Virus record (IMG/VR): IMGVR_UViG_3300025133_009608
Span: 186,001-250,000 of that record
Length of the DNA stretch: 64,000 nucleotides
Reading direction: 5' to 3' (one strand)
Position numbers and translations under genes: made by a program. Position 1 is the first letter of the stretch. Every line of letters starts with the position of its first letter. This document shows, piece after piece, positions 9,765 through 63,999 of the stretch. Below the pieces are notes generated by a model. The model did no database searches. It saw only the letters and a list, made by a program, of their open reading frames with translations, and was not told the DNA's origin.

Positions 9765-9828
9765 CTCGCCTTCTCCGCTTAATTGTGCTATCTGGTGACT
9801 TATATTTAATAATATATATTGCAATATA

Positions 9829-39787: not shown

Positions 39788-40981
39788 TTATTGACCCTTC
39801 TTTTTCTTCTTGGAAATATTATCTATGTTAAAGAACACTTTTAATGCGTCGAACACCTGGCTTCTCTCCGTTACTCTCATGGATACAAATCTAGTTCTAT
39901 TGATCTCTCGGGCAAGCAGGCTTGATAGCAGATCTCCCTCTCGAATCCACGCCCTATGCTCTGTGCTTGGAATAATCTCCCCGTATCCAATGGCCGTAGT
40001 CAGCGGAAGCAGTTTTTTTATATAGTCAACGCACAGAAGGTTATCTTCGCCCCAGTTGTCTCCATCAGACCACTCCATTATATAATTGTTGTATTCCTCG
40101 GGCGGGTGGTTTGACATAATGTGTTCATATGCCATCTTAAATGCAGAACTACACTTTGTTCCTCCGCCGCTATTTACGCTGAAAAATTGCTCTTCATCGA
40201 CTATGAAGGCTTCGGTGTCATGGGCAATAAATACTAGCTTTATATTATCGTACCTTCTCTTTAAAAACTGCACCATCCAGAAATAAAAGCTCTTCGCTAT
40301 ATATCTCTTCTCCTCAGTCATCGAACCGCTGCGGTCCATCATTGCATATATAACAGCGTTTGAATGATACTCTCTTACCGTATCCCAGGACCGATAGCGA
40401 AAATCTGACTCATTTATGCCATCAATTTTCGCCTCACCCTTAGCTGCATTTCTTTTTATGTTTTGAAGAATTGTTTTCTTCAAATCTAAATCTGGATTTA
40501 TTCCCTTCTTCTCAATTGAATCTACCTCTTCGTACTCTACGGCGATTGAGCTTCCAAGGTTTGGTTCCATCCACGGCAAATCCAGCTCCTTAAGAAGCAC
40601 ATCTACTAACTCGTCTATGGATACTTCCGCATCAAAGGTTCGGGGACCCGTTTCATCTCCAGGCTTTCCATCTCCGGGCTTACCCCTTTGGGGTTTTCCG
40701 TTCCCGATTCTAAATTTATCGCCCGGCTTCGTGCTAACCCCCTGGCCGACACCGCCGTTCTTATTTAGTTTCCCATATTTAAATTTGTACTGATCCAAGA
40801 ACTTTATCGGAACTTTTATCTTCTTATTGCCGTCGGTTGTTATAACATTGTATTCTGTAATAAGATCTTTTCCGTGTTTTCTTATGGCGTCTTTTACCAA
40901 CTCCTTATGCCTGTCAGAATCTCTCTTTCCACGGCGTTTAAGATTCCAAATGTCAGAGAGGCTTTTGCCATTTTTCGACAT
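39788..40981 (-). CDS. yhbH: YhbH/YeaH (DUF444) vWA-like protein
   Basis: D..RH, SNAVIYAMMDRSGSM, FIAHDTEA, SGGGTKCSSA, SDGDNW. Confidence 0.9.
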   Translation of the reverse strand: MSKNGKSLSDIWNLKRRGKRDSDRHKELVKDAIRKHGKDLITEYNVITTDGNKKIKVPIKFLDQYKFKYGKLNKNGGVGQGVSTKPGDKFRIGNGKPQRGKPGDGKPGDETGPRTFDAEVSIDELVDVLLKELDLPWMEPNLGSSIAVEYEEVDSIEKKGINPDLDLKKTILQNIKRNAAKGEAKIDGINESDFRYRSWDTVREYHSNAVIYAMMDRSGSMTEEKRYIAKSFYFWMVQFLKRRYDNIKLVFIAHDTEAFIVDEEQFFSVNSGGGTKCSSAFKMAYEHIMSNHPPEEYNNYIMEWSDGDNWGEDNLLCVDYIKKLLPLTTAIGYGEIIPSTEHRAWIREGDLLSSLLAREINRTRFVSMRVTERSQVFDALKVFFNIDNISKKKKKGQ

Positions 40982-40989
40982 TGCTTATC

Positions 40990-42915
40990 CTAGTTTCTGG
41001 CCATCAGTGAGCTGACGTACTTGAGCAGGTTGTTTGCGCTTTCCGGAGTATACCCATGATGATCACAAAGCGCCTCGATTACTACATTTAACTTTTTAAG
41101 TGCATTTTCATCTGGATTTCTTGTACTGACCGTCAACCTGATGACGTCCTGCCGCTCATCAAATAGCTGCTTCTCGAGACCCTCTCTTAGTCTGGGGTGC
41201 TCTTTGTAATTATAGGTTCCATTATCATTTGCAGAGCGGAGCATCTTTCTAAAGATTTCTTGTCTGAATGATTTCTTTCCGGACTCTGTAATTTTCACCT
41301 TCTCTTCTATTGAGCGCATAAGTCTTTCGTCTGGCTCTCGAAGATTCCCCCACTCATCCTCTATTTTTGAGCCATCCAAAAATGCCTCTACTTGATCCAT
41401 ATAGTTTTGAAGTAAGTTTGAAACCTCTTCTTCGAAGTTTAGGAAGAAAGCTTTTTGAACCTCGTTCTTAGCCAACTTGCTATACTCCTCTATCACAAAG
41501 GTTAAGATATTCTCTAGTCGCTCAATTTCCTTTTCGTCAAGTTTCGGATTGGAGATGAACCCTGATCTAATAGATCGAATTATATCGACTGGAGAAATAC
41601 TAGAAACGCCATCTTCGGCAAGGGTTGCTGAAATTCTATTTATAATATATCGAGGAGACACCCCGTCCATGCCTTCTGATGAAAACTCTTTTCTAAGAGC
41701 CTGAACTTCCATCTTTGTAAAGCCCTCAACGTCATCTCCATTATATAGGCGCATTTTATTCATTATGGATAAGCCCTCATTTTTAGAAGTCTTAAGCCTT
41801 GAGAGCACTGCAAACATAGCGGCACAATGAAGCGTATACGGGGCTATATGAACGCCATCGAATCTAGACTGAGAGATCAGCTTTTCGTATATCTTCATCT
41901 CTTCGCTGACCCGAGTATTGTAAGGAACTTTTACCACAATTATGCGGTCGTGCAGAGCCTCCATCTCATCTTTCGCCAAAAAACGATCGTATTCTGTCTG
42001 GTTTGTGTGGGCTAATAAAAATTCATCTGCATAAATTAATGGAAATCTTCCAGTTTTAATATTCTTTTCTTGTGCCAATGTTAGCAGAACATAGAGGAAT
42101 TTCTGATCGACCTTGAGCATTTCGACGAACTCCATCATCCCGCGATTTGCTATATTTAACTCCCCATCAAATCTGTACGCTCTAGGATCAGATTCTGCTC
42201 CATATTCCCCAATCTTGCTAAGATCCATGGAGCCAACTAATTCTGAAATATCTTGGCTCTTTTTATCTGACGGCACGAAGGTTCCAATTCCAGTTCTAGA
42301 CTGCTCTGATAGTATCACTCTCTTTACTGGGAGGTCTAGAAAGTTCCCATCGTATTTATCTCGAAGGATAAGACCCATAAGAGGGCTTAGCTGCCCACGG
42401 ATTAGGATGCCGTGCTCCTCCTTGAACTGGCCCCTTAGGCTTTCGGGAATTGCGCATAACGGGTCCTCCTGCATTGGGGAGTCTGAGAGTCCGTATAGGG
42501 CGCCCTCGTCTATTCTGGAAAATGCCTCCATTCCTCTTTTTAGCGAAATGGCCAACTGAGACTTACCACTAGAAGTTGGTCCAAACATTAAAAGTATTCT
42601 TCGAGAAACTTCACTGCCAGTAGCTGCGGCCCGAAGGTAGGACATGATTTCTTCTATTGATTCGTCAATACCAAATAAATCATTTTCAAAGAATTTATAA
42701 TTTGTTATATTGCCATCCTCGTCTCTGTCAATTCCGGCGTGTTCGATCATCTTTAGGGCCCGCTCGTGAGCACCCATATGAATCGAGGGATTCGTGATTA
42801 CCATCTCGATATAATCTTTGAGAGTGCCCTTCCACAAGGACTCTTCGCCGGCCTCAATGTGCTCGCCTAGCGCGTCTAAAATTGAAAGATTTTTCTTTGA
42901 AGTCTTTTTTGGCAT
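40990..42915 (-). CDS. prkA: PrkA/YeaG AAA+ serine kinase family protein
   Basis: GPTSSGKS, QDISELVGS, ESDPRAY.FDGELN.ANRG..EFVEMLK, EGMDGVSPR. Confidence 0.92.
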   Translation of the reverse strand: MPKKTSKKNLSILDALGEHIEAGEESLWKGTLKDYIEMVITNPSIHMGAHERALKMIEHAGIDRDEDGNITNYKFFENDLFGIDESIEEIMSYLRAAATGSEVSRRILLMFGPTSSGKSQLAISLKRGMEAFSRIDEGALYGLSDSPMQEDPLCAIPESLRGQFKEEHGILIRGQLSPLMGLILRDKYDGNFLDLPVKRVILSEQSRTGIGTFVPSDKKSQDISELVGSMDLSKIGEYGAESDPRAYRFDGELNIANRGMMEFVEMLKVDQKFLYVLLTLAQEKNIKTGRFPLIYADEFLLAHTNQTEYDRFLAKDEMEALHDRIIVVKVPYNTRVSEEMKIYEKLISQSRFDGVHIAPYTLHCAAMFAVLSRLKTSKNEGLSIMNKMRLYNGDDVEGFTKMEVQALRKEFSSEGMDGVSPRYIINRISATLAEDGVSSISPVDIIRSIRSGFISNPKLDEKEIERLENILTFVIEEYSKLAKNEVQKAFFLNFEEEVSNLLQNYMDQVEAFLDGSKIEDEWGNLREPDERLMRSIEEKVKITESGKKSFRQEIFRKMLRSANDNGTYNYKEHPRLREGLEKQLFDERQDVIRLTVSTRNPDENALKKLNVVIEALCDHHGYTPESANNLLKYVSSLMARN

Positions 42916-42931
42916 TCTACTTTTCTCCTGC

Positions 42932-43219
42932 TTATTTTTCTTCACCAAAGATGTCACGAATAGCTCTCTGGTCACCTTCTCTTATTTTATTAGTAATAAC
43001 CCTGGCCTCTTCTTTTGCTTTTTCAACTATTTCTTCTTTTCTTCTTTCTATCTTACCGAAGGGGGCCGAGACTTTTCTGATCAAAGTTTTATTTTGACAT
43101 TCATCGCATAAAAGATCTTCAAAATGATTATTACAAATTAGTTGTTTATATTTTAAAATTCCATAATTAAAATTATGCTGAGTCAAGCATTTGGTACATT
43201 CAAATGTATATTTTGGCAT
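42932..43219 (-). CDS. FmdB-like zinc-ribbon protein
   Basis: MPKYTFECTKC...CDEC. Confidence 0.7.
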   Translation of the reverse strand: MPKYTFECTKCLTQHNFNYGILKYKQLICNNHFEDLLCDECQNKTLIRKVSAPFGKIERRKEEIVEKAKEEARVITNKIREGDQRAIRDIFGEEK

Positions 43220-43404
43220 TATGCCTCCGAGGTTTCTTTATAAAAGAGCAAATCATTTTTAAATTCTATATTTCCAGATAGAGACAGATCTCTTAGTAAT
43301 TTTTTTTTGAACTTTTCATCAGTTATTACTACGCTTATTTCCAAATCATTAGTTTTTGTGTCATATTTAATATTTTTAATCTTTCCAACCTTTTTTTCTT
43401 TCAT
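43219..43404 (-). CDS. Small hypothetical protein
   Basis: Coupled ORF. Confidence 0.5.
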   Translation of the reverse strand: MKEKKVGKIKNIKYDTKTNDLEISVVITDEKFKKKLLRDLSLSGNIEFKNDLLFYKETSEA

Positions 43405-50211: not shown

Positions 50212-52635
50212 TTACCGTCTGCGTCTCTTGTCTATGATAGAGCCGCGCTGAAGCTTGTTAAAGCCCGACTTCTTCTTCTTGATTTTTCTGTGAACCTGGT
50301 CGGCAACGGTGTTAACGTTATCCTCTTCAAGATCGAGGGTCATTGCTGCCACTCTTCCTTTTTCTTTTTGGCCGGCGACCTCTGCCTGCATTCTGCTCTC
50401 TTGTTTGAGGCTTTCAATTCGGTCCCTGGGAAGCCCGAGTCCGGCGAACCAAGAGTAAATCTTTATGGAATCGGAGTCACTCTCTATGTCGTATACTCCC
50501 TGGAATACGGAGGCTCCGTTTGTTTGCTCTGAAATCATATGAAAACAATAATTTATATTTATTGCCGGAAGCTTGTTAAGAACGCCCTCTGGGGCTGAAA
50601 TTATAACTCCACCGACCCTAGTCTGAGAGATGTCAAAGCCAGATGCCAACATATTCCCACTAAGACTCTCTATTACCGCCTCTGCTAGCGCCGTCTCCTC
50701 CATATAATCTTCAACTTCAATCATCCCATAAACAGAGCAGTCTCCGCATGAGATTATCTTTCCAAAGTCACTTGGATCCATTGAAGTATATCGAGACGGA
50801 CGAGACGTAAGTGTATTAAATACATGAAGCGGTTCAACAATTGCATTGTTAGATACGCTCCAAAAGTTATTCTGACTGAGGTTAGAATAAATTTGCTCGA
50901 TTCTCGCATTATCAGCCACAATAAGACTCGAAACCATATTGTCAGAAGTCATTCTTGCAAGTCTAGAAAGGGTTTCTATCGAGTTTCGCTTAGACCGGGC
51001 GTCCTCGGTTGCCTTCGGAAGAATGTAAATCACCCCCACTGGCATGCCGGTCTCAAATAACATCCCCACCATAGTGTCAACGCTTGAAGAGCCCGTTCCG
51101 CCGCCGCCCGATATTGCCAAATAAACCATGTGGTTTCCCGCAGCAACGTCTCCTACGAACTTATGTATATCGGACTCGTTTTCTTCAAAAATCTCTCGAC
51201 CAAGATCCAGATCCTTTCCCGTCCCACCAAGACTGCCCTCAAGAAGCAGCTTCTGAGTGGGAAGAACATCTATAAACTCCAGGTCTTGCGCGGAAGTATT
51301 AATTACTCCAACGTCATATCCTTTTTTATGCATTGTTTCTGCAATTCTCGACCCGGCCTGACCGACACCTATTACTGCTATCTCAATGCTGACAGACTGC
51401 TGAGTTATTATGCTTGGCACATCGTCCTCCATAGTTTTGCTTACCTTGGCCCTTAGAGCCTCAAGGACGTTTTCATCCAAAGAGCTTCCAGAATCTTCGG
51501 GCTGCTCTGTCGAATCATCAAAGGCGTCCATGAGTGCCTCATTTTCAGCCTCAATTTGCTTTGTTTTTTTCGTCTTCTTCTTTATCTTTACATCTTTGAC
51601 GCTAGTTTTCTTCGCTGTCATAAAATCCTCATAATAGCTCTTGAGCTGTGTTAAAATTTGATATTCGCTGGTTATCGCAAATTTTACCGGAGTTTCGTTT
51701 GCATTATACGAAATAACATCACAAAGATACTTGGAATGTTTATTCATAGGATCGGCATTCGTAGTTATTATATCACACCCCATCGCAGAGGCCTCATAGA
51801 GACTCATGCCCAGACCCTCTCGGGTTGACGGCATTAGCACACAATGAGAATTGTCATAAATACTAACCAGGTCTTTCGACACTAATATAGAATTTATTAG
51901 TATGATATTCTTACATTTTTCAGCCAGGGCCCGATCCCTATCAGAAAGAAGCCCGCTTATTGTCAGGGTTGTGCTCGCTCCAGAGTTAGTTGAGAATTTC
52001 GTATATGCCTTAATTACTTCTGTTGTATTTTTCTGACTAAACGATGGGTTTGTAGACCCGGGATGAAAAAATCTTATGCCAGAAAGGTCTTTTTTGTCTA
52101 CCTTTCGAGAAAAGGTGTCTTGATTTACGTAATTCCAGGACATTTTTTTTGCGTTTTCATATTTCCCAAAGATCTCTTTTGATGTATCTGTCAGGCACCA
52201 TATTTCATCAAACGTTCTGTATGAATTGTTATCTATATACCTCTTTATCGACCACTCCGGCATTGGTATGTCTATAATTTTCAAATTTGGGTTGCCCGTC
52301 CTGGCCCTTGTTGTCCATTGAGCCTTCGGCATGAAGGTTTCGAATGATATTATAAGATCTATATTATTTTTGGCAACAATATGTTCGATCCGAGTAGTTT
52401 GCGCGACAATTGTCAACCCGGCATGCAGATTGGCGTCGTTTGGCCGGGGGTACACCGGAGAGAATCCCGCCCGGCCATGAAGTCTTTTGAACTTTGGCTT
52501 TGCAGTATAAATAACTTTATTGTTTTTCGACAGCATGTCTCCAAGAGATTTCGCCAAATAATAAAGACCCGACTCGAATAGATACGTCTTTATTAGAATG
52601 CTCTTGTTTTTAATGTTATCTACTTCGCTATCCAT
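50212..52635 (-). CDS. In-frame fusion of a GT-B (GT4-like) glycosyltransferase and a tubulin/FtsZ-family GTPase (PhuZ/TubZ/CetZ-like), with internal RBS+ATG at 51621
   Basis: GT: PSTREGLGMSLYEA. Tubulin: GVGQAG, INTSAQDL, GGGGTGS, DPSD. Confidence 0.85.
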   Translation of the reverse strand: MDSEVDNIKNKSILIKTYLFESGLYYLAKSLGDMLSKNNKVIYTAKPKFKRLHGRAGFSPVYPRPNDANLHAGLTIVAQTTRIEHIVAKNNIDLIISFETFMPKAQWTTRARTGNPNLKIIDIPMPEWSIKRYIDNNSYRTFDEIWCLTDTSKEIFGKYENAKKMSWNYVNQDTFSRKVDKKDLSGIRFFHPGSTNPSFSQKNTTEVIKAYTKFSTNSGASTTLTISGLLSDRDRALAEKCKNIILINSILVSKDLVSIYDNSHCVLMPSTREGLGMSLYEASAMGCDIITTNADPMNKHSKYLCDVISYNANETPVKFAITSEYQILTQLKSYYEDFMTAKKTSVKDVKIKKKTKKTKQIEAENEALMDAFDDSTEQPEDSGSSLDENVLEALRAKVSKTMEDDVPSIITQQSVSIEIAVIGVGQAGSRIAETMHKKGYDVGVINTSAQDLEFIDVLPTQKLLLEGSLGGTGKDLDLGREIFEENESDIHKFVGDVAAGNHMVYLAISGGGGTGSSSVDTMVGMLFETGMPVGVIYILPKATEDARSKRNSIETLSRLARMTSDNMVSSLIVADNARIEQIYSNLSQNNFWSVSNNAIVEPLHVFNTLTSRPSRYTSMDPSDFGKIISCGDCSVYGMIEVEDYMEETALAEAVIESLSGNMLASGFDISQTRVGGVIISAPEGVLNKLPAININYCFHMISEQTNGASVFQGVYDIESDSDSIKIYSWFAGLGLPRDRIESLKQESRMQAEVAGQKEKGRVAAMTLDLEEDNVNTVADQVHRKIKKKKSGFNKLQRGSIIDKRRRR

Positions 52636-52705: not shown

Positions 52706-53650
52706 TTAAAGAGAGCCGAGAATTTCGCAATACTTAGAAAACAAAGCCTCGGATGAGAAGTTTTCAACGGCATACTCATAAGCTCCAGCCTTCAAATTTC
52801 CACGAAGCCTTTCATCTTCCATTATTTCAATTATTGCCTCAGAATAGTCCTCAATCGTCTTATTAACGATGATTCCGGTCTCATAGTTTTTGCCATGCAA
52901 ATATATTTTAGGATGAGTTACGGAGCAGACGCCAGACGCCCAACTCTCCATAAGGGTTTGGGATTTTGTTTCAGATATTGACGTACCAACGTATAAGCTG
53001 GCGCTTTTAGCTAAGTCAATATGATCAGAATATGAATATGGAGAAGGGTGCCCTATAAATTTAAAATCATATTGTGGCAAAGCCTTTTCCAACTTCAGGC
53101 CAAAGCCTATATCTTTCGCAAAATGCTTAGAGTTTCCCTTCCACATAATAAACCCAGCATCATTATCGCTAGGCTTCCACAGCTCCATCTCTGGCCCAAC
53201 AATGAGAGTCGACATTTTCCTCAAATCAAATTTATGTTCTTTCGCTATTTTATATTTCAACCTATCATTTACAGATAACACATAGTTCGGAGCAGCCATC
53301 CCAAGTAGTGTCGATTCTCTCTTTAGATCTACACAGTCCAAGACGTTTGGGCCCATTATCAACGGAGTCCCAGTATTATTTGAAATCTTTCCGGCGACTC
53401 GATAATGCCCCCCGCTGCCGCTCCAATGATGAGCATAGTCAGACCCCTCAATGCTTCTTTTTAGTCTTGCGATATCTACAATTGAGTAATAATTAATTCC
53501 ATCAAGTTTTTGCTCTACTTTTAGTGTGGTAAATATATCTATTTGAAATCGTTTATCCATTGCCTTTATAAAATTATACAGGGACATTCCGGGGCCATTT
53601 GTAAACCGCCTTGTAGCCCCTACATTGAATGCAAAAATTGTTATTTTCAT
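52706..53650 (-). CDS. GT-B (GT4-like) glycosyltransferase
   Basis: SISETKSQTLMESWASG, ETGIIV. Confidence 0.75.
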   Translation of the reverse strand: MKITIFAFNVGATRRFTNGPGMSLYNFIKAMDKRFQIDIFTTLKVEQKLDGINYYSIVDIARLKRSIEGSDYAHHWSGSGGHYRVAGKISNNTGTPLIMGPNVLDCVDLKRESTLLGMAAPNYVLSVNDRLKYKIAKEHKFDLRKMSTLIVGPEMELWKPSDNDAGFIMWKGNSKHFAKDIGFGLKLEKALPQYDFKFIGHPSPYSYSDHIDLAKSASLYVGTSISETKSQTLMESWASGVCSVTHPKIYLHGKNYETGIIVNKTIEDYSEAIIEIMEDERLRGNLKAGAYEYAVENFSSEALFSKYCEILGSL

Positions 53651-54851: not shown

Positions 54852-56969
54852 TTAAGCCAAATCAGATAGCATGGGCTCCGTGACGTCCCACTTCTCTAAA
54901 ATTTTATATAAATTAGCTATAGTTAAGCCTAAATGCTCTGCTGCTTTATTTTTATTACCATCAAACATCGACACGGCATCTTTTATATCCCTTACCGTTT
55001 TGTCCTGAAACTCTCTCCTGTATACGCTCAGTAGCTTCATTTCGAGATCCATCATATATCGATTTAAAGTTGACGAACTAATCCCAAGCTCCCTGGCCGT
55101 AGTGGTTGCAATTCCGCCATTATTAATAAGAGCTATATCAATTTTATTTCTAATCTCATCTGGAGTTAGCGATTTTGGCATATATCCTAAAATATCCACC
55201 CCGTAATATTCCAGCCGGGCGCTCAAGCCTCTATCATTTGTGCTTAGTGCCCGGGCCATTGCACTTTTATTGCCAAAATTTTCCTCCAGTATTCTTATGA
55301 ACTCCTCCCTACTGCTATCAAAATCTAAATCACGGTAGCTAATTCTACGCGCCTTTCCGCTTATTTCATATAGATCTATATTATTTCTTCTGACAACGGC
55401 TCTAATTCCACTCTCTGTTCTGTTTAGCTTTTTGGCAACAGCGTTTACGTCTCCATTTAGCTCATAAAGAGCAGCAACGACATCCTCCGCCGACACTGGC
55501 TGCTCATTATATAGAAGATCACTTTTATCAAATTTATATTTTTTCATCTTAGTGGCAAATGTGGCCGAGTGCATGTTGATCATCCGGGCCGCCTCGGCAA
55601 TTGAGTGGCTGGATTTTAGTGCATTTAAAATGCTACTCGATTCAGCGTCTTCTACTCTCTTTTTTATTTCATCAATATTTATCCCGAGCGTCCTCATCTC
55701 AATTCTAAGCGTTATTCCGGGCCTTTTTATTTTTCTTGATGTCTCTTTTACATTCCCATTGTTAGCAATCAGCGTGTCAATAATAATCTTCTTTCTCTCT
55801 TCGTCTTTTTTTGTATCCCTGTAATCTTCCGGGTTTAGCCCAAACTTATCCGCATAATGCGCTAAGCTCTGGTACTTCACTCCCATCAACTTGGCGGCAA
55901 GAACTCGGTCTCCATTTGCCTCTACTAAAAACTTTTCTATCTCTGTTATCTTTCTCCTCTCTTCTGCCGCTCGCTCTTTTTCTCTTTCCTCTTTGATGAT
56001 GTTTTTTGCATCAGAGATTTTACTACCAAAATCTGGATGTGCCTCTTCAAATATGTCGATGACTTTTCCCTTTAGCCACCAGGCCGCATCTATAACTTCC
56101 AAATCGGCAGCCTCCATGGAGTCCATATAATTTATGATTTCAAATTCTGGTTTAGACTTTATTTTGTCAGAATAGTAACTATTACTCGCACCAGAGGGAT
56201 ACGGAGAATGGGGATCGCTCTTCAGTATGTTGCACCTATTTCCGCCGCGAGCATGGTCTTTTCCATATTTTTCTTCAACATCTTTATATATCGAAACCTC
56301 AACTCCCAAGAATCGCCTTCTAAAGGACTCCTTGGACTCGCCATCGCTCCTCTCTATGGGCTCTAGGTGGACCATTTCTATCGGCTTATGGAGCGTAGTC
56401 CAGGCTGCGCCACATCGAATATGAGAATTGCCCTCGGTATAATCCGCTGACATCTGATTTGGACCGCCGCCCGCCGCGGGACCATCAGAATTGGGGGAAA
56501 AAATATCACTTAAGCGCATCTTTCTGCTCATAAATTTTTCTACCGCGCCCTTGTCGAATGGCTCGGTATATAATTTTTTTATGGTATCAAGCCCGGCGGA
56601 CGTTACATATAGACGGCCGATTTTGTGCTGTAAGAGCCGCGTGATGGGATTCTTTGCCTCTCCGACATACCAGTTGTATATCGGCAGGCCCGTTAGTGCG
56701 TCGACCACTTGTTTTCCGTCAACTTTGTTTTCTAATTTTAATACATATATGTAGTGAACGCCATCTTGCAGCGGCCCCATTGCTGAAACCTCCTGCCCCG
56801 GCCCTATCCCTAGGTGTGGGATCGGAACTCTGCCGCGCGCGCTCTTTGATATTAGATGACTATAGTCGCAGTTATATGGCATGAGCTCGCCGACGGCGGC
56901 AGCGGCGTCTTTCAGCCCCATGTCCTCCAATATGCCTCGTAATAGTGGGATTTTATTAAATCCTTTCAT
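54852..56969 (-). CDS. GIY-YIG nuclease with seven tandem Fis-type HTH domains and N-terminal tag
   Basis: YIYVLKLE..WYVGE...RLLQH..GAAWT.LHKP..YG...RGG; repeated L...GN...AA..LG.....L... Confidence 0.75.
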   Translation of the reverse strand: MKGFNKIPLLRGILEDMGLKDAAAAVGELMPYNCDYSHLISKSARGRVPIPHLGIGPGQEVSAMGPLQDGVHYIYVLKLENKVDGKQVVDALTGLPIYNWYVGEAKNPITRLLQHKIGRLYVTSAGLDTIKKLYTEPFDKGAVEKFMSRKMRLSDIFSPNSDGPAAGGGPNQMSADYTEGNSHIRCGAAWTTLHKPIEMVHLEPIERSDGESKESFRRRFLGVEVSIYKDVEEKYGKDHARGGNRCNILKSDPHSPYPSGASNSYYSDKIKSKPEFEIINYMDSMEAADLEVIDAAWWLKGKVIDIFEEAHPDFGSKISDAKNIIKEEREKERAAEERRKITEIEKFLVEANGDRVLAAKLMGVKYQSLAHYADKFGLNPEDYRDTKKDEERKKIIIDTLIANNGNVKETSRKIKRPGITLRIEMRTLGINIDEIKKRVEDAESSSILNALKSSHSIAEAARMINMHSATFATKMKKYKFDKSDLLYNEQPVSAEDVVAALYELNGDVNAVAKKLNRTESGIRAVVRRNNIDLYEISGKARRISYRDLDFDSSREEFIRILEENFGNKSAMARALSTNDRGLSARLEYYGVDILGYMPKSLTPDEIRNKIDIALINNGGIATTTARELGISSSTLNRYMMDLEMKLLSVYRREFQDKTVRDIKDAVSMFDGNKNKAAEHLGLTIANLYKILEKWDVTEPMLSDLA

Positions 56970-57009: not shown

Positions 57010-57336
57010 TTAAAATGATACACTCTCGCCGCAACCGCAAGTTCTATCTGCCTTTGGGTTGTTGAATACCAGGCCAGATTTCAAAAGGTCTTCTTCGTAG
57101 TCAATTTCCACTCCATTTAAGAATAAATAAGACTTCATATCAATACAAACTTTGACACCGTTGAACTCAAACACCTTATCCCTCTCTTCGGGCTGGTCTA
57201 TGAATTCATATTTGTACATATAGCCAGAGCAGCCGCCGCCCTGAAGTTTTATTCTAAGATAGTTATCTGGTGTTTGCCGCTTCATTAGAAGCGATCTTAC
57301 CTTGTCCTGCGCAGGTTGTGTCATTGTAATTGCCAT
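57010..57336 (-). CDS. iscA: IscA/HesB Fe-S carrier
   Basis: GGGCSG, CGCGESVSF. Confidence 0.92.
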   Translation of the reverse strand: MAITMTQPAQDKVRSLLMKRQTPDNYLRIKLQGGGCSGYMYKYEFIDQPEERDKVFEFNGVKVCIDMKSYLFLNGVEIDYEEDLLKSGLVFNNPKADRTCGCGESVSF

Positions 57337-57347
57337 TTTGTGCCAAC

Positions 57348-57611
57348 CTAGTAGTATGGGTTTGTGCCAGAAAGGTGATCGGTAACATCCTCAATCTCGC
57401 CGATATCTGGAAACACTTCTCTAAAATGTCTTTGGACTCCAAGCATCATAGTTATTTTTGATGATGCGCACCCATGACACCCTCCACCCATTATTATTTT
57501 AAGTGAATTGTCACTTTCATTGAATTCATGAATGGAAATGTTTCCTCCGTGCATTTCTAAGCCAGAATTTATATCTTCATCTATGATTTTCTGTATCTCT
57601 TCTTTATTCAT
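57348..57611 (-). CDS. Nfu/NifU C-terminal domain protein
   Basis: L..HGG, GGCHGC..S..T. Confidence 0.85.
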   Translation of the reverse strand: MNKEEIQKIIDEDINSGLEMHGGNISIHEFNESDNSLKIIMGGGCHGCASSKITMMLGVQRHFREVFPDIGEIEDVTDHLSGTNPYY

Positions 57612-57996
57612 TCTCTATCCCACGTTTTTTCTTCCAATCACTGATTGCAGCCTTGATGGCATCTTCTGCAAGGACAGAGCAGTGAATTTTGACCGGCGGC
57701 AATGAGAGCTCTCTCGCAATATGGGAATTGGAAATAGCCTCCGCCTCATCGGTGGTCCTTCCGATGACCATGGTGGTCGCCAGTGAGCTAGAGGCCACGG
57801 CTGAGCCACACCCAAATGTCTTGAATTTTGCGTCCTCGATGATACCGTTGTCATTAATCTTGAGTTGCAGTTTCATCAAATCGCCGCAGGCTGGCGCGCC
57901 TACCATGCCAGTACCAACATTCGGATCAGACTTATCTAAGCTGCCCATGTTTCTTGGACTGTCAAAGTGATCCATTACCTTGTCTGAATATGCCAT
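57604..57996 (-). CDS. iscU: Fe-S scaffold IscU
   Basis: PRNMG, APACGD, FGCGSA, LPPVKIHCS. Confidence 0.95.
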   Translation of the reverse strand: MAYSDKVMDHFDSPRNMGSLDKSDPNVGTGMVGAPACGDLMKLQLKINDNGIIEDAKFKTFGCGSAVASSSLATTMVIGRTTDEAEAISNSHIARELSLPPVKIHCSVLAEDAIKAAISDWKKKRGIENE

Positions 57997-58019: not shown

Positions 58020-59003
58020 TTATTGGCCAATTGCGCTCAGCATTTCCAGGTCGTTCTCATACATCTCTTTTAATAGCGCCTTCCAGTCATATTCTGGGTC
58101 CCAGCCGAGCTTCTCTCGAGCCTTGCTCGCGTCTCCTAGTAGGTATGGGACATCTGACGGTCTCAGAAATCTTTTATCCAACTCATATACTTCTTCAAAC
58201 TCCAGGCCGGCGAGATAACAAACGTACCTGAGCATTTCTCCTATTGTTGCTCCCGATCCTGTGGCTATGACGTAATTTTCCGGAGCTTCTTGCTGTAGCA
58301 TCAGCCACATCGCTTTTACATAGTCCTTGCTGCAGCCTTCATCTCTAAATGCGGACAGGTCGCCCATTTTCAACGTATCTTGAAGCCCCAACTTAACGGA
58401 AGCAACTCCGTGAGTTATCTTTCGAGCTGCAAAGCTCACGCCTCGGCGCAGAGAAGAGTGATTGAACAAAATTCCAGAAACGGCGAACAACCCATAAGCT
58501 TCTCGGTAATTATTTACGGACAGGTGAGCCGCACACTTAGAAATAGCGTAGGGAGAGCGGGGATTGAGGGGAGAGTTCTCGTTATACCCCTCCCTTGGGC
58601 AGTCAACTCCCCCTAGCATTTCGCTCGTGGAGGCTTGATAATAGCGAGTGGCCGGAGAGTAGTCTTTCAGCAAAGAAAGATGCATTATCACGGCTTCTGC
58701 GTTTACCTGAAATACCTTTACCGGATTCACAAAGCTGTAACCAACATGACTGGCGGCCCCTAGGTTGTAAAACTCATGAGGCTGTACGTCATGGATCAAC
58801 CGGCCGATAAAAATGGGATCAGAAAGGTCTCCCTCGGTGTAGTGGAAGTTTTCATCATCCATTAGATGAGCTATGTTCTCCGTTCCAGAATTAACGCTCT
58901 TGCGAATACTAACTCCAAATACCTCATACCCCTTACTTAGCAGAAATTCTGCCAAATATGAACCATCCTGTCCCGCCGTGCCTGTTATTATTGCCCTAAG
59001 CAT
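58020..59003 (-). CDS. gmd: GDP-mannose 4,6-dehydratase
   Basis: TGTAGQDGSYL, YQASTSE, PRSPYAISK, LRPSDV. Confidence 0.92.
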   Translation of the reverse strand: MLRAIITGTAGQDGSYLAEFLLSKGYEVFGVSIRKSVNSGTENIAHLMDDENFHYTEGDLSDPIFIGRLIHDVQPHEFYNLGAASHVGYSFVNPVKVFQVNAEAVIMHLSLLKDYSPATRYYQASTSEMLGGVDCPREGYNENSPLNPRSPYAISKCAAHLSVNNYREAYGLFAVSGILFNHSSLRRGVSFAARKITHGVASVKLGLQDTLKMGDLSAFRDEGCSKDYVKAMWLMLQQEAPENYVIATGSGATIGEMLRYVCYLAGLEFEEVYELDKRFLRPSDVPYLLGDASKAREKLGWDPEYDWKALLKEMYENDLEMLSAIGQ

Positions 59004-59086
59004 TAAAGCTCCTTAATTATAGAATTATAATACTTCATATAAGGCATTTACTTTGTCTATTTTTTATCGAACAATAATTTTTAAAA

Positions 59087-59638
59087 CTATTTTTCCAAAA
59101 TAACACTACCCGCCGAAGGTAGGTCATACAGCCTAACCTCTCCGCCTTTTGCTCCAAGGCTCCCGAACCCCCCGCCGCCGGGCTCAAGGCCTCCATCCTC
59201 CTCCGGGCCCATAGCTCCGGTAACCGGTCTCCCCGATTTTATTATTTCTTGTATTTCCATAATTGTTTCGTGCATATCTTCGGAATAAAACGGCAACCTA
59301 TAAGATCTTGGATCTGATAACTGCCGGCGTCGAAAAAACTCATAAGAATCATCCAACTCTCCATCGGCTTCGCTTATCCATAAAAATATTGCCCCCGGCT
59401 CTCCAGACGCCTTATTTGGACTTCTTGCCAGGGCCCAGTGTATTAAAAATTTATCTGGCAACCCGACCTCGGCGGGCCATCCGGCCAAGTTCTCTAAAGA
59501 TCGGGCGATATTGAGCGAAAACAAGACCGTAGCCGTTATCGCAACAAGCTTAGCCCACCACCTACCGCTTGATCCGATAACAAACCATAACAATATTGAC
59601 GCAAGGACTATAAATATCAAAGAAACCTCTATCACCAT
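59087..59638 (-). CDS. Membrane protein (2 TM plus soluble domain), third gene of the MotA/ExbB triad
   Basis: Hydrophobic N-terminus; coupled to the upstream gene. Confidence 0.6.
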   Translation of the reverse strand: MVIEVSLIFIVLASILLWFVIGSSGRWWAKLVAITATVLFSLNIARSLENLAGWPAEVGLPDKFLIHWALARSPNKASGEPGAIFLWISEADGELDDSYEFFRRRQLSDPRSYRLPFYSEDMHETIMEIQEIIKSGRPVTGAMGPEEDGGLEPGGGGFGSLGAKGGEVRLYDLPSAGSVILEK

Positions 59639-60678: not shown

Positions 60679-63600
60679 TCAGCGCCCCTGCTTGGTAACG
60701 CTCGAAAGCCACCGGGCGCGAGCTGTCCGCCCATTAGGAGCAAGCCCACTATAGTCATCGATCTTATCCAGACCGAGCTCAAAAAAGTAGTAACCACCTT
60801 TTGCCTCTGCTAATCGACTGGCTGCAGAAATTGCGAAATCTGCATCACCGTATATTTCGTGTATTTTGCTATCAAAAAATTCATAAGGAGAGGCCTTCGC
60901 CAGAGACTCCGCAGCCTCCATTGTCAAGTGTCCGTATTCATCCGATTCGTGAAATTTTAGATCAAAAAAGATTCGAGGGCCTAATTCTATCATCCCCTTC
61001 ATGGCAATCGGTATTCTGTCTTTGTACTTATCTATTTTGTAAAGATCACTTCCAAAGAATACCCACGGAAAGCTCTCTATTATCCTGTCTATTGCGACTT
61101 CCGCAAGAACCTCGTACCTTTCATCGGCTGCCGTATCGGGGCCCTCCTCGAAAAAGGCCCATGGGTATTTCCCTGTAGCCAAGGCCTCCGCTGCGGCGAG
61201 CCCAAATTCCGAATATTCCGCCATCATGTGAAGGTTGAGCTTAAAAAATTCATCTGGATTTTTTTCGGATAAAGCTTTCGCGGCGGGCAGGGCTGCTGCC
61301 GCGTATATATCACTTGGGCCCTGCTTATGTATTTCTAATTGAAAATAAGAATATGGACGTGACTCTACCATGCATTTTACAAATTTCTTATTTAATACTT
61401 CAAATCTTGGGTCATTAAATCGGCCATTTAATAACTTTAAGTATTTTTCATAATCACTACATACATATCTCTTGGCCATCCTGATGGCTATCGTGATAAA
61501 CTCCTCGACGGTGTGTAGTCCGTTATCTGTAAAGTCAGAGAAGCTATCCGAGTTATTTTTCGCCAAGGTTGCATCAAGTGTGTGCATCGTGTTATTTGTC
61601 AGCAACTCTTTTAGATTAACATTGGTCGCGTACTCTCCTAAGGCCTTAATTGCTTGTCCTTTTTTGTAATAATCATTTTGATTCTCCATATTATATATCA
61701 CGTATCTATCCAAAAAGACTCTTGCAGACTCCTTTAGCCCTTCATCATCAAATACTTCATTAGGAAGGTTTTCCATCATATCTTGAATCATATACCCATC
61801 TGGGACGCCAAAGCCTTCGATTCTCGCATCCGAATTAAAGGCGTCAATCCATACCTTCATCCGTTCCCGAATAAATTCTATAGTTTTATATTTTTCAACC
61901 GGGAGAATCACCAACGCCCTCCATTCCAGATGGGATCCAAGAGATGTTTCTATTAGCATTTCTCGCAACTCCTCTGTTTCTAGCAAATCAAAGATCCCCA
62001 GAACCTCTTCTTCCGATATATGCTCGGAATGTAGGACGTATGAGCTCACAGCTTTCGAGATAAGCACATCTGGCAGGTGATTGTCCTTATTCGCCCTCAT
62101 AACCTTCTCAAATCCGTAACTTCGTTCGTCGATCATTATTGTTTCAATATTTTTAGCAAGAAACCTCAAAGCAATTGGGGATAGCGCAGACATCCCAAGT
62201 ACGGAAAAGAAAACACTACTGAGATTGTACTCTTTACCTTTCTCTTCCATATTGCTCAAAACACCGTCGACCAAGTTATGCTCCTCTCGACCGGCTAGGA
62301 CTGCTATAACTTCATCCGGAGACCATAGGGCTCCGGAGTAATAATTATCCATTATCTTTTCAGTCTCGGCAATCATCCAATAATCGTCTGAATCTTCATA
62401 ATCTATTGGAGCAAAATACTCATCCAGCCAATTACGAATATATGGTGCATACTTCTGTACCGGAGGGGCGTTTTCCTTTCCCTTTATTTGATGCACATTT
62501 CTGCCCGATGAGCCTCCCACCTCTATTGTCACGTGAGGCTCATTCTTGGCGTCTCTTAGAGAATAGATCTTAAGGCGCCCAATGATGATGTCATCGCAAT
62601 AGCCCCCAACGCAGTGCCCCATGTTGCGACCCTCGGTTTCGACATCCTCGGGCGGGACAAGAACCATCGTGTATCCGTCCCCAAAATCATGATGAACATT
62701 TTTTGTATTATATTCGCCAACTTCAATAGCCGGAACAAACTGCTCGTGCCACTTTTCGGCAGCCTGGATCATGGTCTGCGCGGAAATACTCTGCCATGGG
62801 CCCATTCCCGGCTCAGGGAACGCATCCAGAGAGTTCACATAATCCTTAATTTGAATTAAAACCAGCCGTGGCGATGCCGCTTCATTCATATTAATGTTCG
62901 CCAGCCACTTAATAAATGGCTTTCTATTCTTATGGGGCAACAGGTCATCACCGACGAGGGCAATGGCATTTAATGCCGATCTATTAAAAATTGGTCCATC
63001 CTCTGCCCTCTCGGAAAGGCTCTCAAAATAAGATCGAGGATCTTGCTCCGGGCTCTTTGCGATCTGCTTTTGCAATGACTTTATATTAATCTTTTTTAGA
63101 TACTCCTTATCTGCCTGTGCGGCAACCTTGTGCAGCTTTTCTATCTGGCCCATCCGGCCTCTTTCGCTTTCGCAAGCTCTAATTATTGATATATCTTTTG
63201 CCTCTTTCTTGAAGCCATTACTCCGAAGCCATTTCGACAGCCTATCTAGAGCATAATCAGGCTCATCTGGCCACTCATCCGGATCGAACTCAGACCACTG
63301 CTCATTTAGCGAAATATATTTAGATGGTATGTGACCATTGATAATTATTGTATCGTGATCAACTCCGTCATTAGCCGCCTCAGAATCAGAATACTCCACC
63401 CCCAGAGCCCAGGCTATGGAGTTTATCATTTTTTCTCTATAAATAGCCGGCTCCATCTCTATAACAGGGAGCTCTTCATTCTTTTGCTCATAATCTTTGC
63501 GCATCGCGCTTAAATCTATTTCAAATATATAGTCGCCATAAGAGTCAATTGCTTCTGGATTGAAGCTTGCGAAAATAGCACTTCCAACCCAGCGATTTGA

Positions 63601-63999
63601 AAGCCCCCTCGTCTTGCTCATTGGAGATAGCCCTTCTCGCATAATTGATTTAACATTCTCTCCTGGAGTTGCGTGATAGGCTATTCCGGCAAAGTAATCC
63701 TCCTGATAATTCTCCTCGTCAACGTAGTCTTCTGGGGAAATGTTATAAATCCAATGATTCGCGTCTTCGGAGCCGCTTATATTTTCACCGTCCATGTCAG
63801 CAACATGTTTGTCGCCCCGCCAGCCAAATGCATAAATTTTACTCAGGCCCTCTTTTTCGTTCGTAAGATCTATAACTTCCGTGGATCCACCGTCCTTATT
63901 TATAAGCTCAGAAAACCTACTCCAATTAAGCGCCTCATACCCCCCTATCACGTCCTCAAGGATCCCGAGCTCTTCCTCGGTCAAGCCTTCTGGTTTCAT
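60679..63999 (-). CDS. Large polyvalent protein: ADP-ribosyltransferase-like domain, internal tag, PcfJ-like domain and helical repeats (may extend beyond the window)
   Basis: YHAT...SIMREGL...IFAS...IP; EGRNMGHCVGGY..YSLRD..PHVTIE..QIKG..N; about 30-aa repeats at the C-terminus. Confidence 0.65.
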   Translation of the reverse strand: MKPEGLTEEELGILEDVIGGYEALNWSRFSELINKDGGSTEVIDLTNEKEGLSKIYAFGWRGDKHVADMDGENISGSEDANHWIYNISPEDYVDEENYQEDYFAGIAYHATPGENVKSIMREGLSPMSKTRGLSNRWVGSAIFASFNPEAIDSYGDYIFEIDLSAMRKDYEQKNEELPVIEMEPAIYREKMINSIAWALGVEYSDSEAANDGVDHDTIIINGHIPSKYISLNEQWSEFDPDEWPDEPDYALDRLSKWLRSNGFKKEAKDISIIRACESERGRMGQIEKLHKVAAQADKEYLKKINIKSLQKQIAKSPEQDPRSYFESLSERAEDGPIFNRSALNAIALVGDDLLPHKNRKPFIKWLANINMNEAASPRLVLIQIKDYVNSLDAFPEPGMGPWQSISAQTMIQAAEKWHEQFVPAIEVGEYNTKNVHHDFGDGYTMVLVPPEDVETEGRNMGHCVGGYCDDIIIGRLKIYSLRDAKNEPHVTIEVGGSSGRNVHQIKGKENAPPVQKYAPYIRNWLDEYFAPIDYEDSDDYWMIAETEKIMDNYYSGALWSPDEVIAVLAGREEHNLVDGVLSNMEEKGKEYNLSSVFFSVLGMSALSPIALRFLAKNIETIMIDERSYGFEKVMRANKDNHLPDVLISKAVSSYVLHSEHISEEEVLGIFDLLETEELREMLIETSLGSHLEWRALVILPVEKYKTIEFIRERMKVWIDAFNSDARIEGFGVPDGYMIQDMMENLPNEVFDDEGLKESARVFLDRYVIYNMENQNDYYKKGQAIKALGEYATNVNLKELLTNNTMHTLDATLAKNNSDSFSDFTDNGLHTVEEFITIAIRMAKRYVCSDYEKYLKLLNGRFNDPRFEVLNKKFVKCMVESRPYSYFQLEIHKQGPSDIYAAAALPAAKALSEKNPDEFFKLNLHMMAEYSEFGLAAAEALATGKYPWAFFEEGPDTAADERYEVLAEVAIDRIIESFPWVFFGSDLYKIDKYKDRIPIAMKGMIELGPRIFFDLKFHESDEYGHLTMEAAESLAKASPYEFFDSKIHEIYGDADFAISAASRLAEAKGGYYFFELGLDKIDDYSGLAPNGRTARARWLSSVTKQGR

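What the first reader, a model, noticed from the sequence alone, without database searches (positions are those of the whole stretch)
54852..56969. GIY-YIG nuclease with seven divergent Fis-type HTH repeats
Seen: tag, GIY-YIG-type domain, coiled linker, then 7 HTH units (e.g. ANGDRVLAAKLMGV, NNGNVKETSRKIKR, LNGDVNAVAKKLNR, NFGNKSAMARALST, FDGNKNKAAEHLGL), each with a different recognition helix. Inference: a modular long-site DNA reader fused to a nuclease. It is free-standing, with no flanking intron seen. It could be a homing endonuclease or an injected nuclease against host or competitor DNA, and is of engineering interest.
Basis: partly seen in the sequence, partly recalled or inferred. 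Interest (0 to 1): 0.7.

Follow-up and report, generated by a model that had tools for sequence, protein, structure and literature searches.

The report
Tagged phage nuclease with seven HTHs
An uncultivated 317-kb marine jumbo phage encodes a 705-residue protein that joins a short address-like tag and a GIY-YIG DNA-cutting domain to a string of seven different Fis-type DNA-binding modules; this domain combination was not found elsewhere, and the gene looks like a fixed phage gene, not a mobile homing endonuclease.

Summary
Window 54852-56969 (-) is one intact 705-aa ORF in an IMG/VR jumbo-phage record (316,664 bp).

- **HTH array:** the C-terminal half matches Pfam HTH_8 (Fis type) at E 1.7e-21. 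AlphaFold2 resolves seven three-helix units about 50 aa apart. The units are 12-28% identical to each other.
- **Nuclease domain:** the N-terminal half has no Pfam hit of its own, but four lines assign it to GIY-YIG.
  - Tyr/Tyr/Gly/Arg/His/Glu are invariant, with I-TevI spacing.
  - Relatives give sub-threshold PF01541 hits.
  - The best structural match among 48,161 chains is the I-TevI catalytic domain (Z 6.1).
  - ESM-Atlas neighbours are GIY-YIG clusters.
- **Tag:** the N-terminus is a divergent copy of a ~30-aa peptide found on at least 15 otherwise unrelated proteins of this phage.
- **Conservation:** an 82%-identical orthologue sits at the same locus with seven units, no indel and dN/dS 0.09. 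More distant relatives keep the nuclease but have two, three or no detectable units.
- **Mobility:** no gene-less allele, intron, NUMOD module or second copy was found.

The gene is best read as a resident, selected, tag-addressed endonuclease positioned on DNA by the HTH array. Cleavage, target and the tag's role are inferred, not shown. I rate it a new variant of a known kind, of moderate interest.

The parts
54852..56969 (-). Whole ORF, 705 aa plus stop (P0001). It lies 40 nt downstream of the IscA-like gene. Its stop is 1 nt before the start of the downstream cupin gene.
56835..56969 (-). N-terminal tag region, residues 1-45. It is a two-helix hairpin (helices 6-16 and 20-27) and a divergent member of the phage's shared ~30-aa tag.
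56226..56768 (-). GIY-YIG nuclease domain, residues 68-248. Invariant residues are Y75, Y101, G103, R111, H115 and E224. Strands are at 71-79, 99-105 and 196-206.
56415..56618 (-). Family-specific insertion inside the GIY-YIG domain, residues 118-185. It is partly helical and partly low-confidence, and lies between the Arg/His helix and the third strand.
56034..56156 (-). 'Unit 0', residues 272-312: a conserved acidic three-helix module (net charge -7) of unknown role.
55920..56036 (-). Long charged Glu/Arg/Lys-rich helix, residues about 312-350. It links the nuclease half to HTH unit 1 and runs into that unit's first helix.
55830..55958 (-). HTH unit 1, residues 338-380.
55677..55808 (-). HTH unit 2, residues 388-431.
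55527..55649 (-). HTH unit 3, residues 441-481. On its own it scores 29.7 bits against HTH_8, above the cut-off.
55371..55496 (-). HTH unit 4, residues 492-533. It has no Pfam hit on its own; it is three-helical in the model and aligns in register with the other units.
55194..55319 (-). HTH unit 5, residues 551-592.
55035..55163 (-). HTH unit 6, residues 603-645. It gives weak HTH_8, HTH_24, HTH_7 and NUMOD1 hits.
54879..55007 (-). HTH unit 7, residues 655-697. On its own it scores 25 bits against HTH_8, above the cut-off.

Best explanation
The gene encodes a resident, selected DNA endonuclease of an uncultivated marine jumbo-phage lineage. It does not look like an actively mobile element.

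Shown:
- An intact GIY-YIG fold with every catalytic-type residue invariant across the family.
- A long charged helix after the nuclease half.
- Seven structurally separate Fis-type three-helix HTH domains, arranged like beads on a string.
- An N-terminal two-helix tag related to a peptide shared by at least 15 unrelated proteins of the same phage.
- Strong purifying selection on every part.

Inferred:
- The HTH array lies along DNA with successive units in successive major grooves, giving a footprint of several tens of base pairs. This gives affinity and some sequence preference.
- The charged helix acts as a spacer that places the monomeric GIY-YIG domain to nick or cut beside the bound stretch, as the linker of I-TevI does.
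- The tag docks the protein to the same partner or compartment as the other tagged proteins.
- The most likely substrate is non-self DNA (host chromosome or a co-infecting phage). This is my guess, because the phage keeps the gene single-copy and fixed and shows no sign of homing.
For: - **Domain anatomy:**
- **GIY-YIG, motifs:** Y75, Y101, G103, R111, H115 and E224 are invariant in 10 family members. The YVG-to-Arg (10) and Arg-to-His (4) spacings equal those of I-TevI residues 17, 27 and 31.
- **GIY-YIG, other lines:** PF01541 is hit by 4 of 10 relatives, best E 4.9e-5. The I-TevI catalytic domain is the only chain of 48,161 with Z of 5 or more (Z 6.1, 85 of 92 residues). Five other GIY-YIG nucleases are in the top 12. 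In the ESM Atlas, 60 of 100 feature neighbours are PF01541 clusters.
- **Selection:** the orthologue is 82% identical with no gap. dN/dS is 0.088 overall and 0.02-0.37 for each HTH unit, with dS about 1.2.
- **Fixed position:** synteny is the same in L003. Junction-spanning contigs occur in other samples and no contig skips the gene.
- **Copy number:** one copy per genome.
- **Modularity:** the nuclease is conserved while the array varies (7, 2, about 3 or 0 units) across the family.
- **Tag:**. It is conserved at the protein level and not as a DNA cassette.
Against: - No biochemical evidence exists for cleavage or DNA binding.
- This protein itself has no Pfam GIY-YIG hit. Foldseek found nothing significant. 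A Z of 6.1 is within the range the tool warns can be a common arrangement.
- The array is nearly neutral (+4), and units 4-7 have net charge 0 or -1.
- The relative placement of the units is unknown (pTM 0.35).
- No target site or self-protection mechanism was identified.
- Only one close relative and a few contig fragments were available to test presence or absence. Logan contigs drop rare variants.
Confidence: 0.5

Rival explanations
1. It is a free-standing homing endonuclease, like the Seg proteins of T4. The HTH array would recognise a long, degenerate site in the allele of related phages that lacks the gene. The GIY-YIG domain would cut nearby, and repair would copy the gene in.
For: - The architecture (N-terminal GIY-YIG, linker, C-terminal HTH-type DNA-binding modules) is that of I-TevI-like enzymes (PMC1564403).
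- Units 6 and 7 give weak NUMOD1 or I-HmuI-NUMOD-like hits (E 0.07-0.1).
- About 25 marine contigs share the upstream IscU-NifU-IscA cassette at 70-87% identity, and none has the gene downstream.
- The C-terminal DNA-binding part varies strongly among family members.
Against: - Those 25 contigs differ in all their flanking genes, so they are not gene-less alleles of this locus.
- The only close relative has the gene at the same site, with seven units, no indel and dN/dS 0.09 at saturated dS.
- No skipping joint was seen in four metagenomes.
- No intron RNA was found, and promoter and terminator matches are not above chance.
- There is one copy per genome.
- The protein carries the tag shared with at least 15 resident phage proteins.
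- At 705 aa it is far larger than known Seg or I-Tev enzymes (I-TevI is 245 aa).
Confidence: 0.17
2. It is mainly a DNA-architectural or regulatory protein of the phage, for example a nucleoid organiser, an origin or packaging-site binder, or a repressor of a repeated promoter. The GIY-YIG domain would act as a structure-specific Slx1-like nickase in phage replication, recombination or genome processing, or would only bind DNA.
For: - Fis-type HTHs are classically architectural or regulatory.
- The family lacks the conserved C-terminal Asn, as the Slx1/UPF0213 lineage does (PMC1564403). Slx1 is the best sequence-level PDB hit (E 0.83).
- PHROG hits of single units include small-terminase and repressor HTHs (E 0.002-0.08).
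- The genome has a ~24-bp promoter-like motif in about 40 copies that some factor could bind.
Against: - All these hits are weak.
- The invariance of all catalytic-type residues argues for catalysis, not just binding.
- Nothing links the protein to the repeated motif.
- Family members without a detectable HTH keep the nuclease domain. The nuclease, not the array, is therefore the family's constant.
Confidence: 0.2
3. The N-terminal domain is a degenerate, catalytically dead GIY-YIG-like fold, and the protein is only a multi-HTH DNA binder.
For: There is no Pfam hit in this protein. A ~68-residue insertion sits in the domain and a 15-residue longer hairpin lies between the GIY and YIG boxes. 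Model confidence is moderate (pLDDT 71.5).
Against: Y, Y, G, R, H and E are invariant across 10 members that are only 26-39% identical. The two core halves are 93% and 90% identical to the orthologue.
Confidence: 0.08

Closest known systems
GIY-YIG homing endonucleases I-TevI and I-BmoI, and the free-standing Seg endonucleases of T4-like phages
   Same: All are phage-encoded, with an N-terminal GIY-YIG catalytic domain tethered by a linker to C-terminal modular DNA-binding elements that include HTH units. The I-TevI catalytic domain is the best structural match, and the YVG...R...H motif has identical spacing.
   Different: - There are seven Fis-type (HTH_8) units in place of Zn-finger, NUMOD3 and NUMOD1 modules.
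- The protein is three times larger.
- The nuclease domain has a ~68-aa insertion and no conserved C-terminal Asn.
- It carries an N-terminal tag.
- No intron and no presence/absence polymorphism were seen, and the gene is under strong purifying selection at a fixed locus.
Slx1 and the bacterial UPF0213 (YhbQ-type) GIY-YIG lineage
   Same: Slx1 is the best sequence-level PDB hit, at the YVG..NP..R..QH motif. Both have a Gly-Ala-x-x-Thr segment after the His helix (read by eye). Both lack the motif-E Asn (PMC1564403).
   Different: There is no RING or zinc-finger domain and no Slx4-type partner. The hit is not significant (E 0.83). The C-terminal HTH array has no counterpart.
T4 endonuclease II (DenA), a GIY-YIG enzyme that starts host DNA breakdown
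   Same: It is a phage GIY-YIG nuclease kept as a resident gene and aimed at non-self DNA. It appears among the structural matches (Z 3.7).
   Different: DenA is 144 aa with no separate DNA-binding array. Its selectivity depends on T4's modified DNA. No evidence was obtained on DNA modification in this phage.
Tandem HTH DNA readers: Fis/NtrC C-terminal HTH (single unit, dimeric), and from my own knowledge the Drosophila Pipsqueak domain (four ~50-aa HTH repeats), Myb R1R2R3 and paired or Tc1/mariner bipartite HTH
   Same: The three-helix HTH units are of the Fis type. The period is about 50 residues. The whole-array fold search returns only multi-HTH or winged-helix proteins such as SelB, SNAPc, Mos1, SETMAR, AraC, Reb1 and c-Myb, all non-significant.
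   Different: Seven units sit in one chain and are fused to a nuclease. A word-indexed search of 5.8 billion proteins with the array found only the protein itself and its 80% orthologue.
Capsid targeting sequence of T4 internal proteins
   Same: A short conserved N-terminal peptide is the only thing shared by a set of otherwise unrelated, mostly small phage proteins (PMC3012670).
   Different: - The tag here is about 30 aa, against roughly 10 aa for the T4 sequence (length from my own knowledge).
- It is predicted to be a helical hairpin.
- It is sometimes internal or C-terminal.
- The phage gave no match to the T4 head-protease or gp23 families, though those searches lacked a working control.
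- Packaging into virions and cleavage are untested.

Membership tests
GIY-YIG nuclease superfamily | Two boxes, 'GIY' and 'YIG', each with a conserved Tyr on adjacent beta-strands | tested here: met
   Y75 (in the YIYVLKL strand) and Y101 (in WYVG) are invariant in 10 members. Strands at 71-79 and 99-105 are in the model. The hairpin between the boxes is 26 residues, against 11 in I-TevI.
GIY-YIG nuclease superfamily | Conserved Arg (and His) in the helix after the YIG box, at fixed spacing | tested here: met
   R111 and H115 are invariant. hhalign pairs Y101, G103, R111 and H115 with I-TevI Y17, G19, R27 and H31, at 41% identity over 17 residues.
GIY-YIG nuclease superfamily | Metal-binding catalytic Glu in the helix after the third strand | tested here: met
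   E224 is invariant and lies in helix 213-235, after strand 196-206. Equivalence to I-TevI E75 is inferred from its position in the fold. Model coordinates could not be inspected.
GIY-YIG nuclease superfamily | C-terminal conserved Asn (motif E) | tested here: not met
   No conserved Asn follows E224; the family has a conserved Arg-Gly-Gly-x-Trp/Cys motif there instead. The superfamily survey shows motif E is absent in the Slx1 lineage, so it is not obligatory (PMC1564403).
GIY-YIG nuclease superfamily | Three-stranded sheet flanked by helices (I-TevI or UvrC N-terminal fold) | tested here: met
   VIA-align against 48,161 chains puts 1ln0 (I-TevI) first at Z 6.1, rmsd 2.9 and 85 of 92 residues. 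At-HIGLE, PD-T4-3, UvrC, Slx1 and EndoII are in the top 12. Atlas structure neighbours are GIY-YIG clusters. Foldseek was not significant.
GIY-YIG nuclease superfamily | Pfam PF01541 above the gathering score | tested here: not met
   This protein gives no hit. The best full-length relative scores 21.6 bits against a cut-off of 22.6. Four of 10 truncated relatives hit at E down to 4.9e-5.
GIY-YIG nuclease superfamily | Divalent-metal-dependent DNA cleavage | not testable with these tools
   This needs purified protein.
GIY-YIG homing endonucleases (I-TevI or Seg type) | C-terminal NUMOD-type DNA-binding modules | tested here: not met
   Only sub-threshold NUMOD1 (13.3-13.8 bits against 22.8) and I-HmuI-NUMOD-like (12.5 against 27) hits on units 6 and 7. 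The units are HTH_8.
GIY-YIG homing endonucleases (I-TevI or Seg type) | Sporadic presence or absence at a conserved locus among close relatives, or residence in an intron or intein | tested here: inconclusive
   - The gene is present at the same site in the only close relative.
- Junction-spanning contigs exist and no contig skips the gene in four runs.
- No intron RNA was found.
- Sampling of close relatives is thin, and contigs drop rare variants.
GIY-YIG homing endonucleases (I-TevI or Seg type) | Cleavage of the cognate gene-less allele | not testable with these tools
   No gene-less allele was found to define a site.
Fis-type HTH (Pfam HTH_8, PF02954) | Profile match above the gathering score | tested here: met
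   The whole protein scores 76.1 bits against 22. Units 3 and 7 pass individually. Units 2, 5 and 6 score 13.5-18.1 bits. Units 1 and 4 give no HTH_8 hit alone.
Fis-type HTH (Pfam HTH_8, PF02954) | Three-helix bundle with a helix-turn-helix of about 7-8 residues, a 3-4-residue turn and about 10 residues | tested here: met
   All seven units have this geometry in the AlphaFold2 model, with pLDDT mostly 70-86.
Fis-type HTH (Pfam HTH_8, PF02954) | DNA binding through the last helix | not testable with these tools
   Inferred only. The net charges of the units range from +5 to -1.
Capsid targeting sequence (T4 internal-protein type) | Short conserved N-terminal peptide shared by otherwise unrelated proteins of one phage | tested here: met
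   At least 15 ORFs carry it. It is conserved at the protein level. The GIY-YIG family carries a divergent form. It also occurs internally or at the C-terminus in a few proteins, which fits a docking domain better than a cleaved leader.
Capsid targeting sequence (T4 internal-protein type) | Incorporation into the prohead core and removal by the prohead protease | not testable with these tools
   This needs virion proteomics. A head-maturation-protease domain exists in a 1108-aa protein at G000 39995-43321. The T4-type S77 protease was not found, but that search had no positive control.

The most novel reading that the evidence does not exclude
The ~30-aa tag is an addressing peptide that delivers a whole set of unrelated phage proteins to one destination, for example the capsid interior for ejection into the host. 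This nuclease is the one tagged cargo with a recognisable enzyme domain. Its seven non-identical HTH units read DNA additively, one unit per major groove. The natural variation in unit number across the family (7, 3, 2 or 0) would then reflect retargeting of one nuclease chassis.
Probability: 0.15. Interest if true: 0.75.

Novelty: new variant of a known kind. Interest (0 to 1): 0.5.

Why it matters
A nuclease tethered to modular DNA binders is the design of I-TevI and of engineered nucleases. A natural GIY-YIG enzyme with seven tandem, mutually divergent Fis-type HTH domains was not found anywhere else among billions of proteins searched. If the units bind DNA additively, it would be a new natural scaffold for long-site recognition by a monomeric nickase or cleavase.

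The shared tag points to an undescribed protein-addressing system in an abundant group of uncultivated marine jumbo phages. That system could be tested directly with tag-reporter fusions once a host is available.

If the protein is instead an ordinary phage nuclease with a sticky DNA-binding tail, the result is just a new domain architecture.

Tried and rejected
- **Self-comparison:** BLASTP of the C-terminal half against itself found no internal repeat. The units are too divergent; the repeat shows only in profile, structure and in-register alignment.
- **PDB by sequence:** phmmer of the protein found nothing meaningful.
- **Foldseek against PDB:** neither model gave a significant hit.
- **Direct tag search:** hmmsearch with the strict tag profile did not detect the family N-termini. 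Only profile-profile comparison did. The C-terminal 'SRWLELRKFA' motif of four longer relatives could not be tied to the tag (E 0.5 and 0.013).
- **Isolated phages:** tblastn against 50,697 genomes gave no homologue of the nuclease half and none of a tagged protein.
- **Presence or absence test:** I used the upstream IscA gene in metagenomes. Of 29 loci, the gene follows IscA only in the window's own contig (L013); the other contigs differ in all flanks, so the test does not bear on mobility. A search with the downstream 285-aa gene found only a contig identical to the window over that gene.
- **Other tagged proteins:** Pfam and PHROG scans of 17 gave no domain that hints at the tag's role.
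- **T4-type head genes:** searches for the T4 head protease and gp23 were negative but lacked a working control.
- **DNA cassette idea for the tag:** rejected. Third-codon identity is only 53% where the amino acids are identical.
- **Complex prediction:** I did not run one with DNA. The target sequence is unknown and the tool gives no verdict for DNA partners.
Full report
**Setting.** The window is bases 186,001-250,000 of a 316,664-bp IMG/VR virus record estimated 94% complete. About 90% of its ORFs lie on the minus strand. The record encodes a large terminase, a portal and a head-maturation-protease domain. It also encodes ribonucleotide reductase, helicases and PhoH. Around the finding lie GDP-mannose dehydratase, an IscU-NifU-IscA cassette, a cupin, glycosyltransferases and a glycosyltransferase-tubulin fusion. 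It is an uncultivated marine jumbo phage. Neither the nuclease half of the finding nor a tagged protein has a homologue among 50,697 isolated phage genomes.

**The ORF.** Window 54852-56969 (-) is one open frame of 705 codons. The stop of the IscA-like gene is 40 nt upstream, and the next gene starts 1 nt after the stop. Promoter-like and terminator-like matches are no more frequent than in shuffled sequence. No Rfam family, and so no group I or II intron, matches within 10 kb.

**C-terminal half.**
- Pfam HTH_8 (the Fis family) matches the whole protein at 76 bits, against a cut-off of 22. It matches nowhere else in the genome.
- Scanned singly, units 3 and 7 pass the cut-off. Units 2, 5 and 6 are sub-threshold. 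Unit 1 gives a weak MerR-type hit and unit 4 gives none.
- The AlphaFold2 model of residues 325-705 (pLDDT 74) shows seven three-helix units with canonical helix-turn-helix geometry. The low pTM (0.35) means the units are confidently folded but their mutual arrangement is not defined.
- The units align in register on the pattern hydrophobic-x3-Leu ... Asn/Gly-Gly-Asn/Asp ... Ala-Ala ... Leu-Gly ... Leu ... Gly-Ile/Val. They are only 12-28% identical to each other, which is why self-BLAST sees nothing.
- A fold search with the whole array returns only multi-HTH and winged-helix proteins, none significant.
- The array's net charge is +4. Units 1-3 are basic and units 4-7 are neutral. DNA binding is an inference from the family, not a result.

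**N-terminal half.** Pfam finds nothing in residues 1-335. An exhaustive HMMER search of 1.84 billion cluster representatives found only nine clusters with this domain. Their alignment has invariant Y75, L77, L79, N81, N99, W100, Y101, G103, R111, H115, G187, W190, H194, V200, E224, G236 and G242. Four lines assign it to GIY-YIG:
1. The Tyr, Tyr-x-Gly, Arg and His positions have exactly the spacing of I-TevI residues 17, 19, 27 and 31 (hhalign, 41% identity over 17 residues). An invariant Glu follows the third strand.
2. Four of ten relatives hit PF01541, best E 4.9e-5. These hits are just under the curated cut-off on full-length proteins. A profile of the family has Slx1 as its top PDB hit, at this same motif (E 0.83).
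3. The AlphaFold2 model (pLDDT 71.5), aligned to 48,161 PDB chains without a prefilter, has the I-TevI catalytic domain as its best match and the only one with Z of 5 or more (Z 6.1, rmsd 2.9, 85 of 92 residues). At-HIGLE, PD-T4-3, UvrC, Slx1 and T4 EndoII are among the top twelve.
4. In the ESM Atlas, 60 of 100 feature neighbours of residues 60-250 are PF01541 clusters, and the structural neighbours are also GIY-YIG clusters.

The domain is atypical in three ways. It has a 26-residue hairpin between the two boxes. It has a ~68-residue insertion after the Arg/His helix. It has no conserved C-terminal Asn, a trait of the Slx1 lineage according to the superfamily survey (PMC1564403).

After the domain come two further elements. 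The first is a conserved acidic three-helix module at residues 272-312. The second is a long Glu/Arg/Lys-rich helix at about 312-350 that runs into the first helix of unit 1. I found no evidence for a coiled coil.

**The tag.**
- The family N-termini share a pattern: Lys-hydrophobic-x2-Leu-x2-Trp/Ile-Leu-x3-Gly-hydrophobic-x2-Glu/Asp-Ala.
- In the related contig L006, the genes around the family member start with near-identical peptides.
- A profile of those peptides finds at least 15 ORFs in the window's genome that carry MIKELIKLATHLDERGL-x-KEADYLD-x-VIKK or close variants. Most lie at 144-161 kb and one is in the window at 9120-9824. More divergent copies also exist, some internal or C-terminal.
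- The rest of these proteins is unrelated and has no Pfam or PHROG family.
- The tag is conserved as protein, not as a DNA cassette: 72% amino-acid identity, but only 53% third-position identity at identical residues.
- Fifty-three metagenomic clusters share it, on contigs up to 328 kb, and none is annotated.
- Profile-profile comparison aligns the family N-termini with the tag end to end, positions 1-34 on 1-34 (probability 74%, P 2.9e-5).

The closest known analogue is the capsid targeting sequence, which is the only thing shared by the diverse internal proteins of T-even phages (PMC3012670). That is an analogy, not a test.

**Evolution and mobility.**
- A metagenomic orthologue (P0002, locus L003) is 82% identical, the same length with no indel, and has the same neighbours on both sides.
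- Nei-Gojobori dN/dS is 0.088 overall, with dS about 1.2, and 0.02-0.37 for each of the seven units. All seven units are therefore maintained by selection.
- More distant family members keep the nuclease domain but have two units (P0003), about three scattered units (P0006, P0007) or none detectable. They sit among tagged genes in their own contigs.
- The genome has one copy and no other GIY-YIG gene.
- I laid Logan contigs of four public metagenomes on the locus. Two are marine and near-identical. Two are hydrothermal-vent samples with relatives at roughly 85-99% identity. Pieces span both gene-flank junctions and no contig joins the flanks without the gene.
- The upstream Fe-S cassette occurs at 70-87% identity in about 25 other marine contigs, but with entirely different flanks, so they say nothing about an empty site.

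None of this proves immobility, because sampling is thin. Still, nothing positive supports homing, and the tag ties the protein to resident phage biology.

**Mechanism, with its status.**
- Shown: the fold and motif integrity of the nuclease, the seven HTH folds, the spacer helix, the tag relationship, purifying selection and a fixed locus.
- Inferred: the array binds along DNA, the helix sets the distance to the cut as in I-TevI, the tag docks the protein with the other tagged proteins, and the substrate is non-self DNA.
- I put 0.5 on this reading, 0.17 on a genuine homing endonuclease, 0.2 on an architectural, regulatory or structure-specific role in phage DNA transactions, and 0.08 on a dead nuclease domain.

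**Verdict.** The protein is a new domain architecture within a known design (GIY-YIG plus tethered DNA-binding modules), so it is a new variant of a known kind. Interest is moderate. It comes from the uniqueness of the seven-unit Fis-type array and from the unexplained shared tag, not from any demonstrated function.

Noticed in passing
window 9120-9824 (-), with the tag starting at the internal Met21; also G000 52907-53389, 58531-59244, 112644-114775, 136469-136663 and 144410-161670 (L007): A ~30-aa peptide (MIKELIKLATHLDERGL-x-KEADYLD-x-VIKK) heads at least 15 otherwise unrelated, mostly small acidic proteins of this phage and many proteins of related contigs. It is conserved at the protein level, is absent from Pfam and PHROGs, and occurs in 53 unannotated metagenomic clusters. 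One tagged ORF lies just upstream of the large terminase. Its function is unknown; it may be an addressing or docking peptide.
   Followed up: partly
L029 (marine contig Ga0209535_1000594), ORFs at 11-535, 465-1076, 1086-1508, 1512-2786, 4203-4901, 6309-6731, 8314-8559 and 8564-9073: A different marine phage contig has its own shared N-terminal peptide (MKITRRQLRQIIKEE and variants) on at least seven ORFs. Shared N-terminal tags may therefore be a recurring feature of marine phages.
   Followed up: no
window 71-5796 (about 12 copies); G000 160-192 kb overall: About 40 copies of a ~28-bp promoter-like motif lie mostly 20-60 bp upstream of minus-strand genes. It reads TTC[G/C]AT, then a conserved 17-bp spacer AAATAAGATCGATTCAT, then TATAG. 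A variant (TTTTGATATAAATAATCTCGATTTATTAT) occurs at 103-143 kb. This is probably an early promoter class. None lies in front of the finding.
   Followed up: partly
window 50212-52635 (-): An 807-aa protein fuses a group-1 glycosyltransferase domain (residues ~200-298) to a tubulin/FtsZ GTPase domain (residues 418-583). This is an unusual fusion for a phage tubulin.
   Followed up: no
window 57010-57996 (-): An IscU-NifU-IscA iron-sulphur assembly cassette is shared at 70-87% protein identity with about 25 marine metagenome contigs whose flanking genes are entirely different. In several of them it lies beside ribonucleotide reductase. It looks like a widely exchanged auxiliary metabolic cassette.
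   Followed up: partly
window 60679-63999 (-), running on to G000 250047; residues 266-292 of the 1122-aa product: A large protein carries, internally, the same tag sub-variant as the GIY-YIG family (LDRLSKWLRSNGFKKEAKD). G000 152636-153391 has a similar segment. The tag-like hairpin is therefore not strictly N-terminal.
   Followed up: no
P0006, P0007, P0008, P0010 and L006 7875-10445 (C-termini): The longer family members end in a conserved motif (Ser-Arg-Trp-Leu-x-Leu/Ile-Arg-Lys-Phe-Ala) preceded by an acidic stretch. Its relation to the N-terminal tag could not be established.
   Followed up: partly
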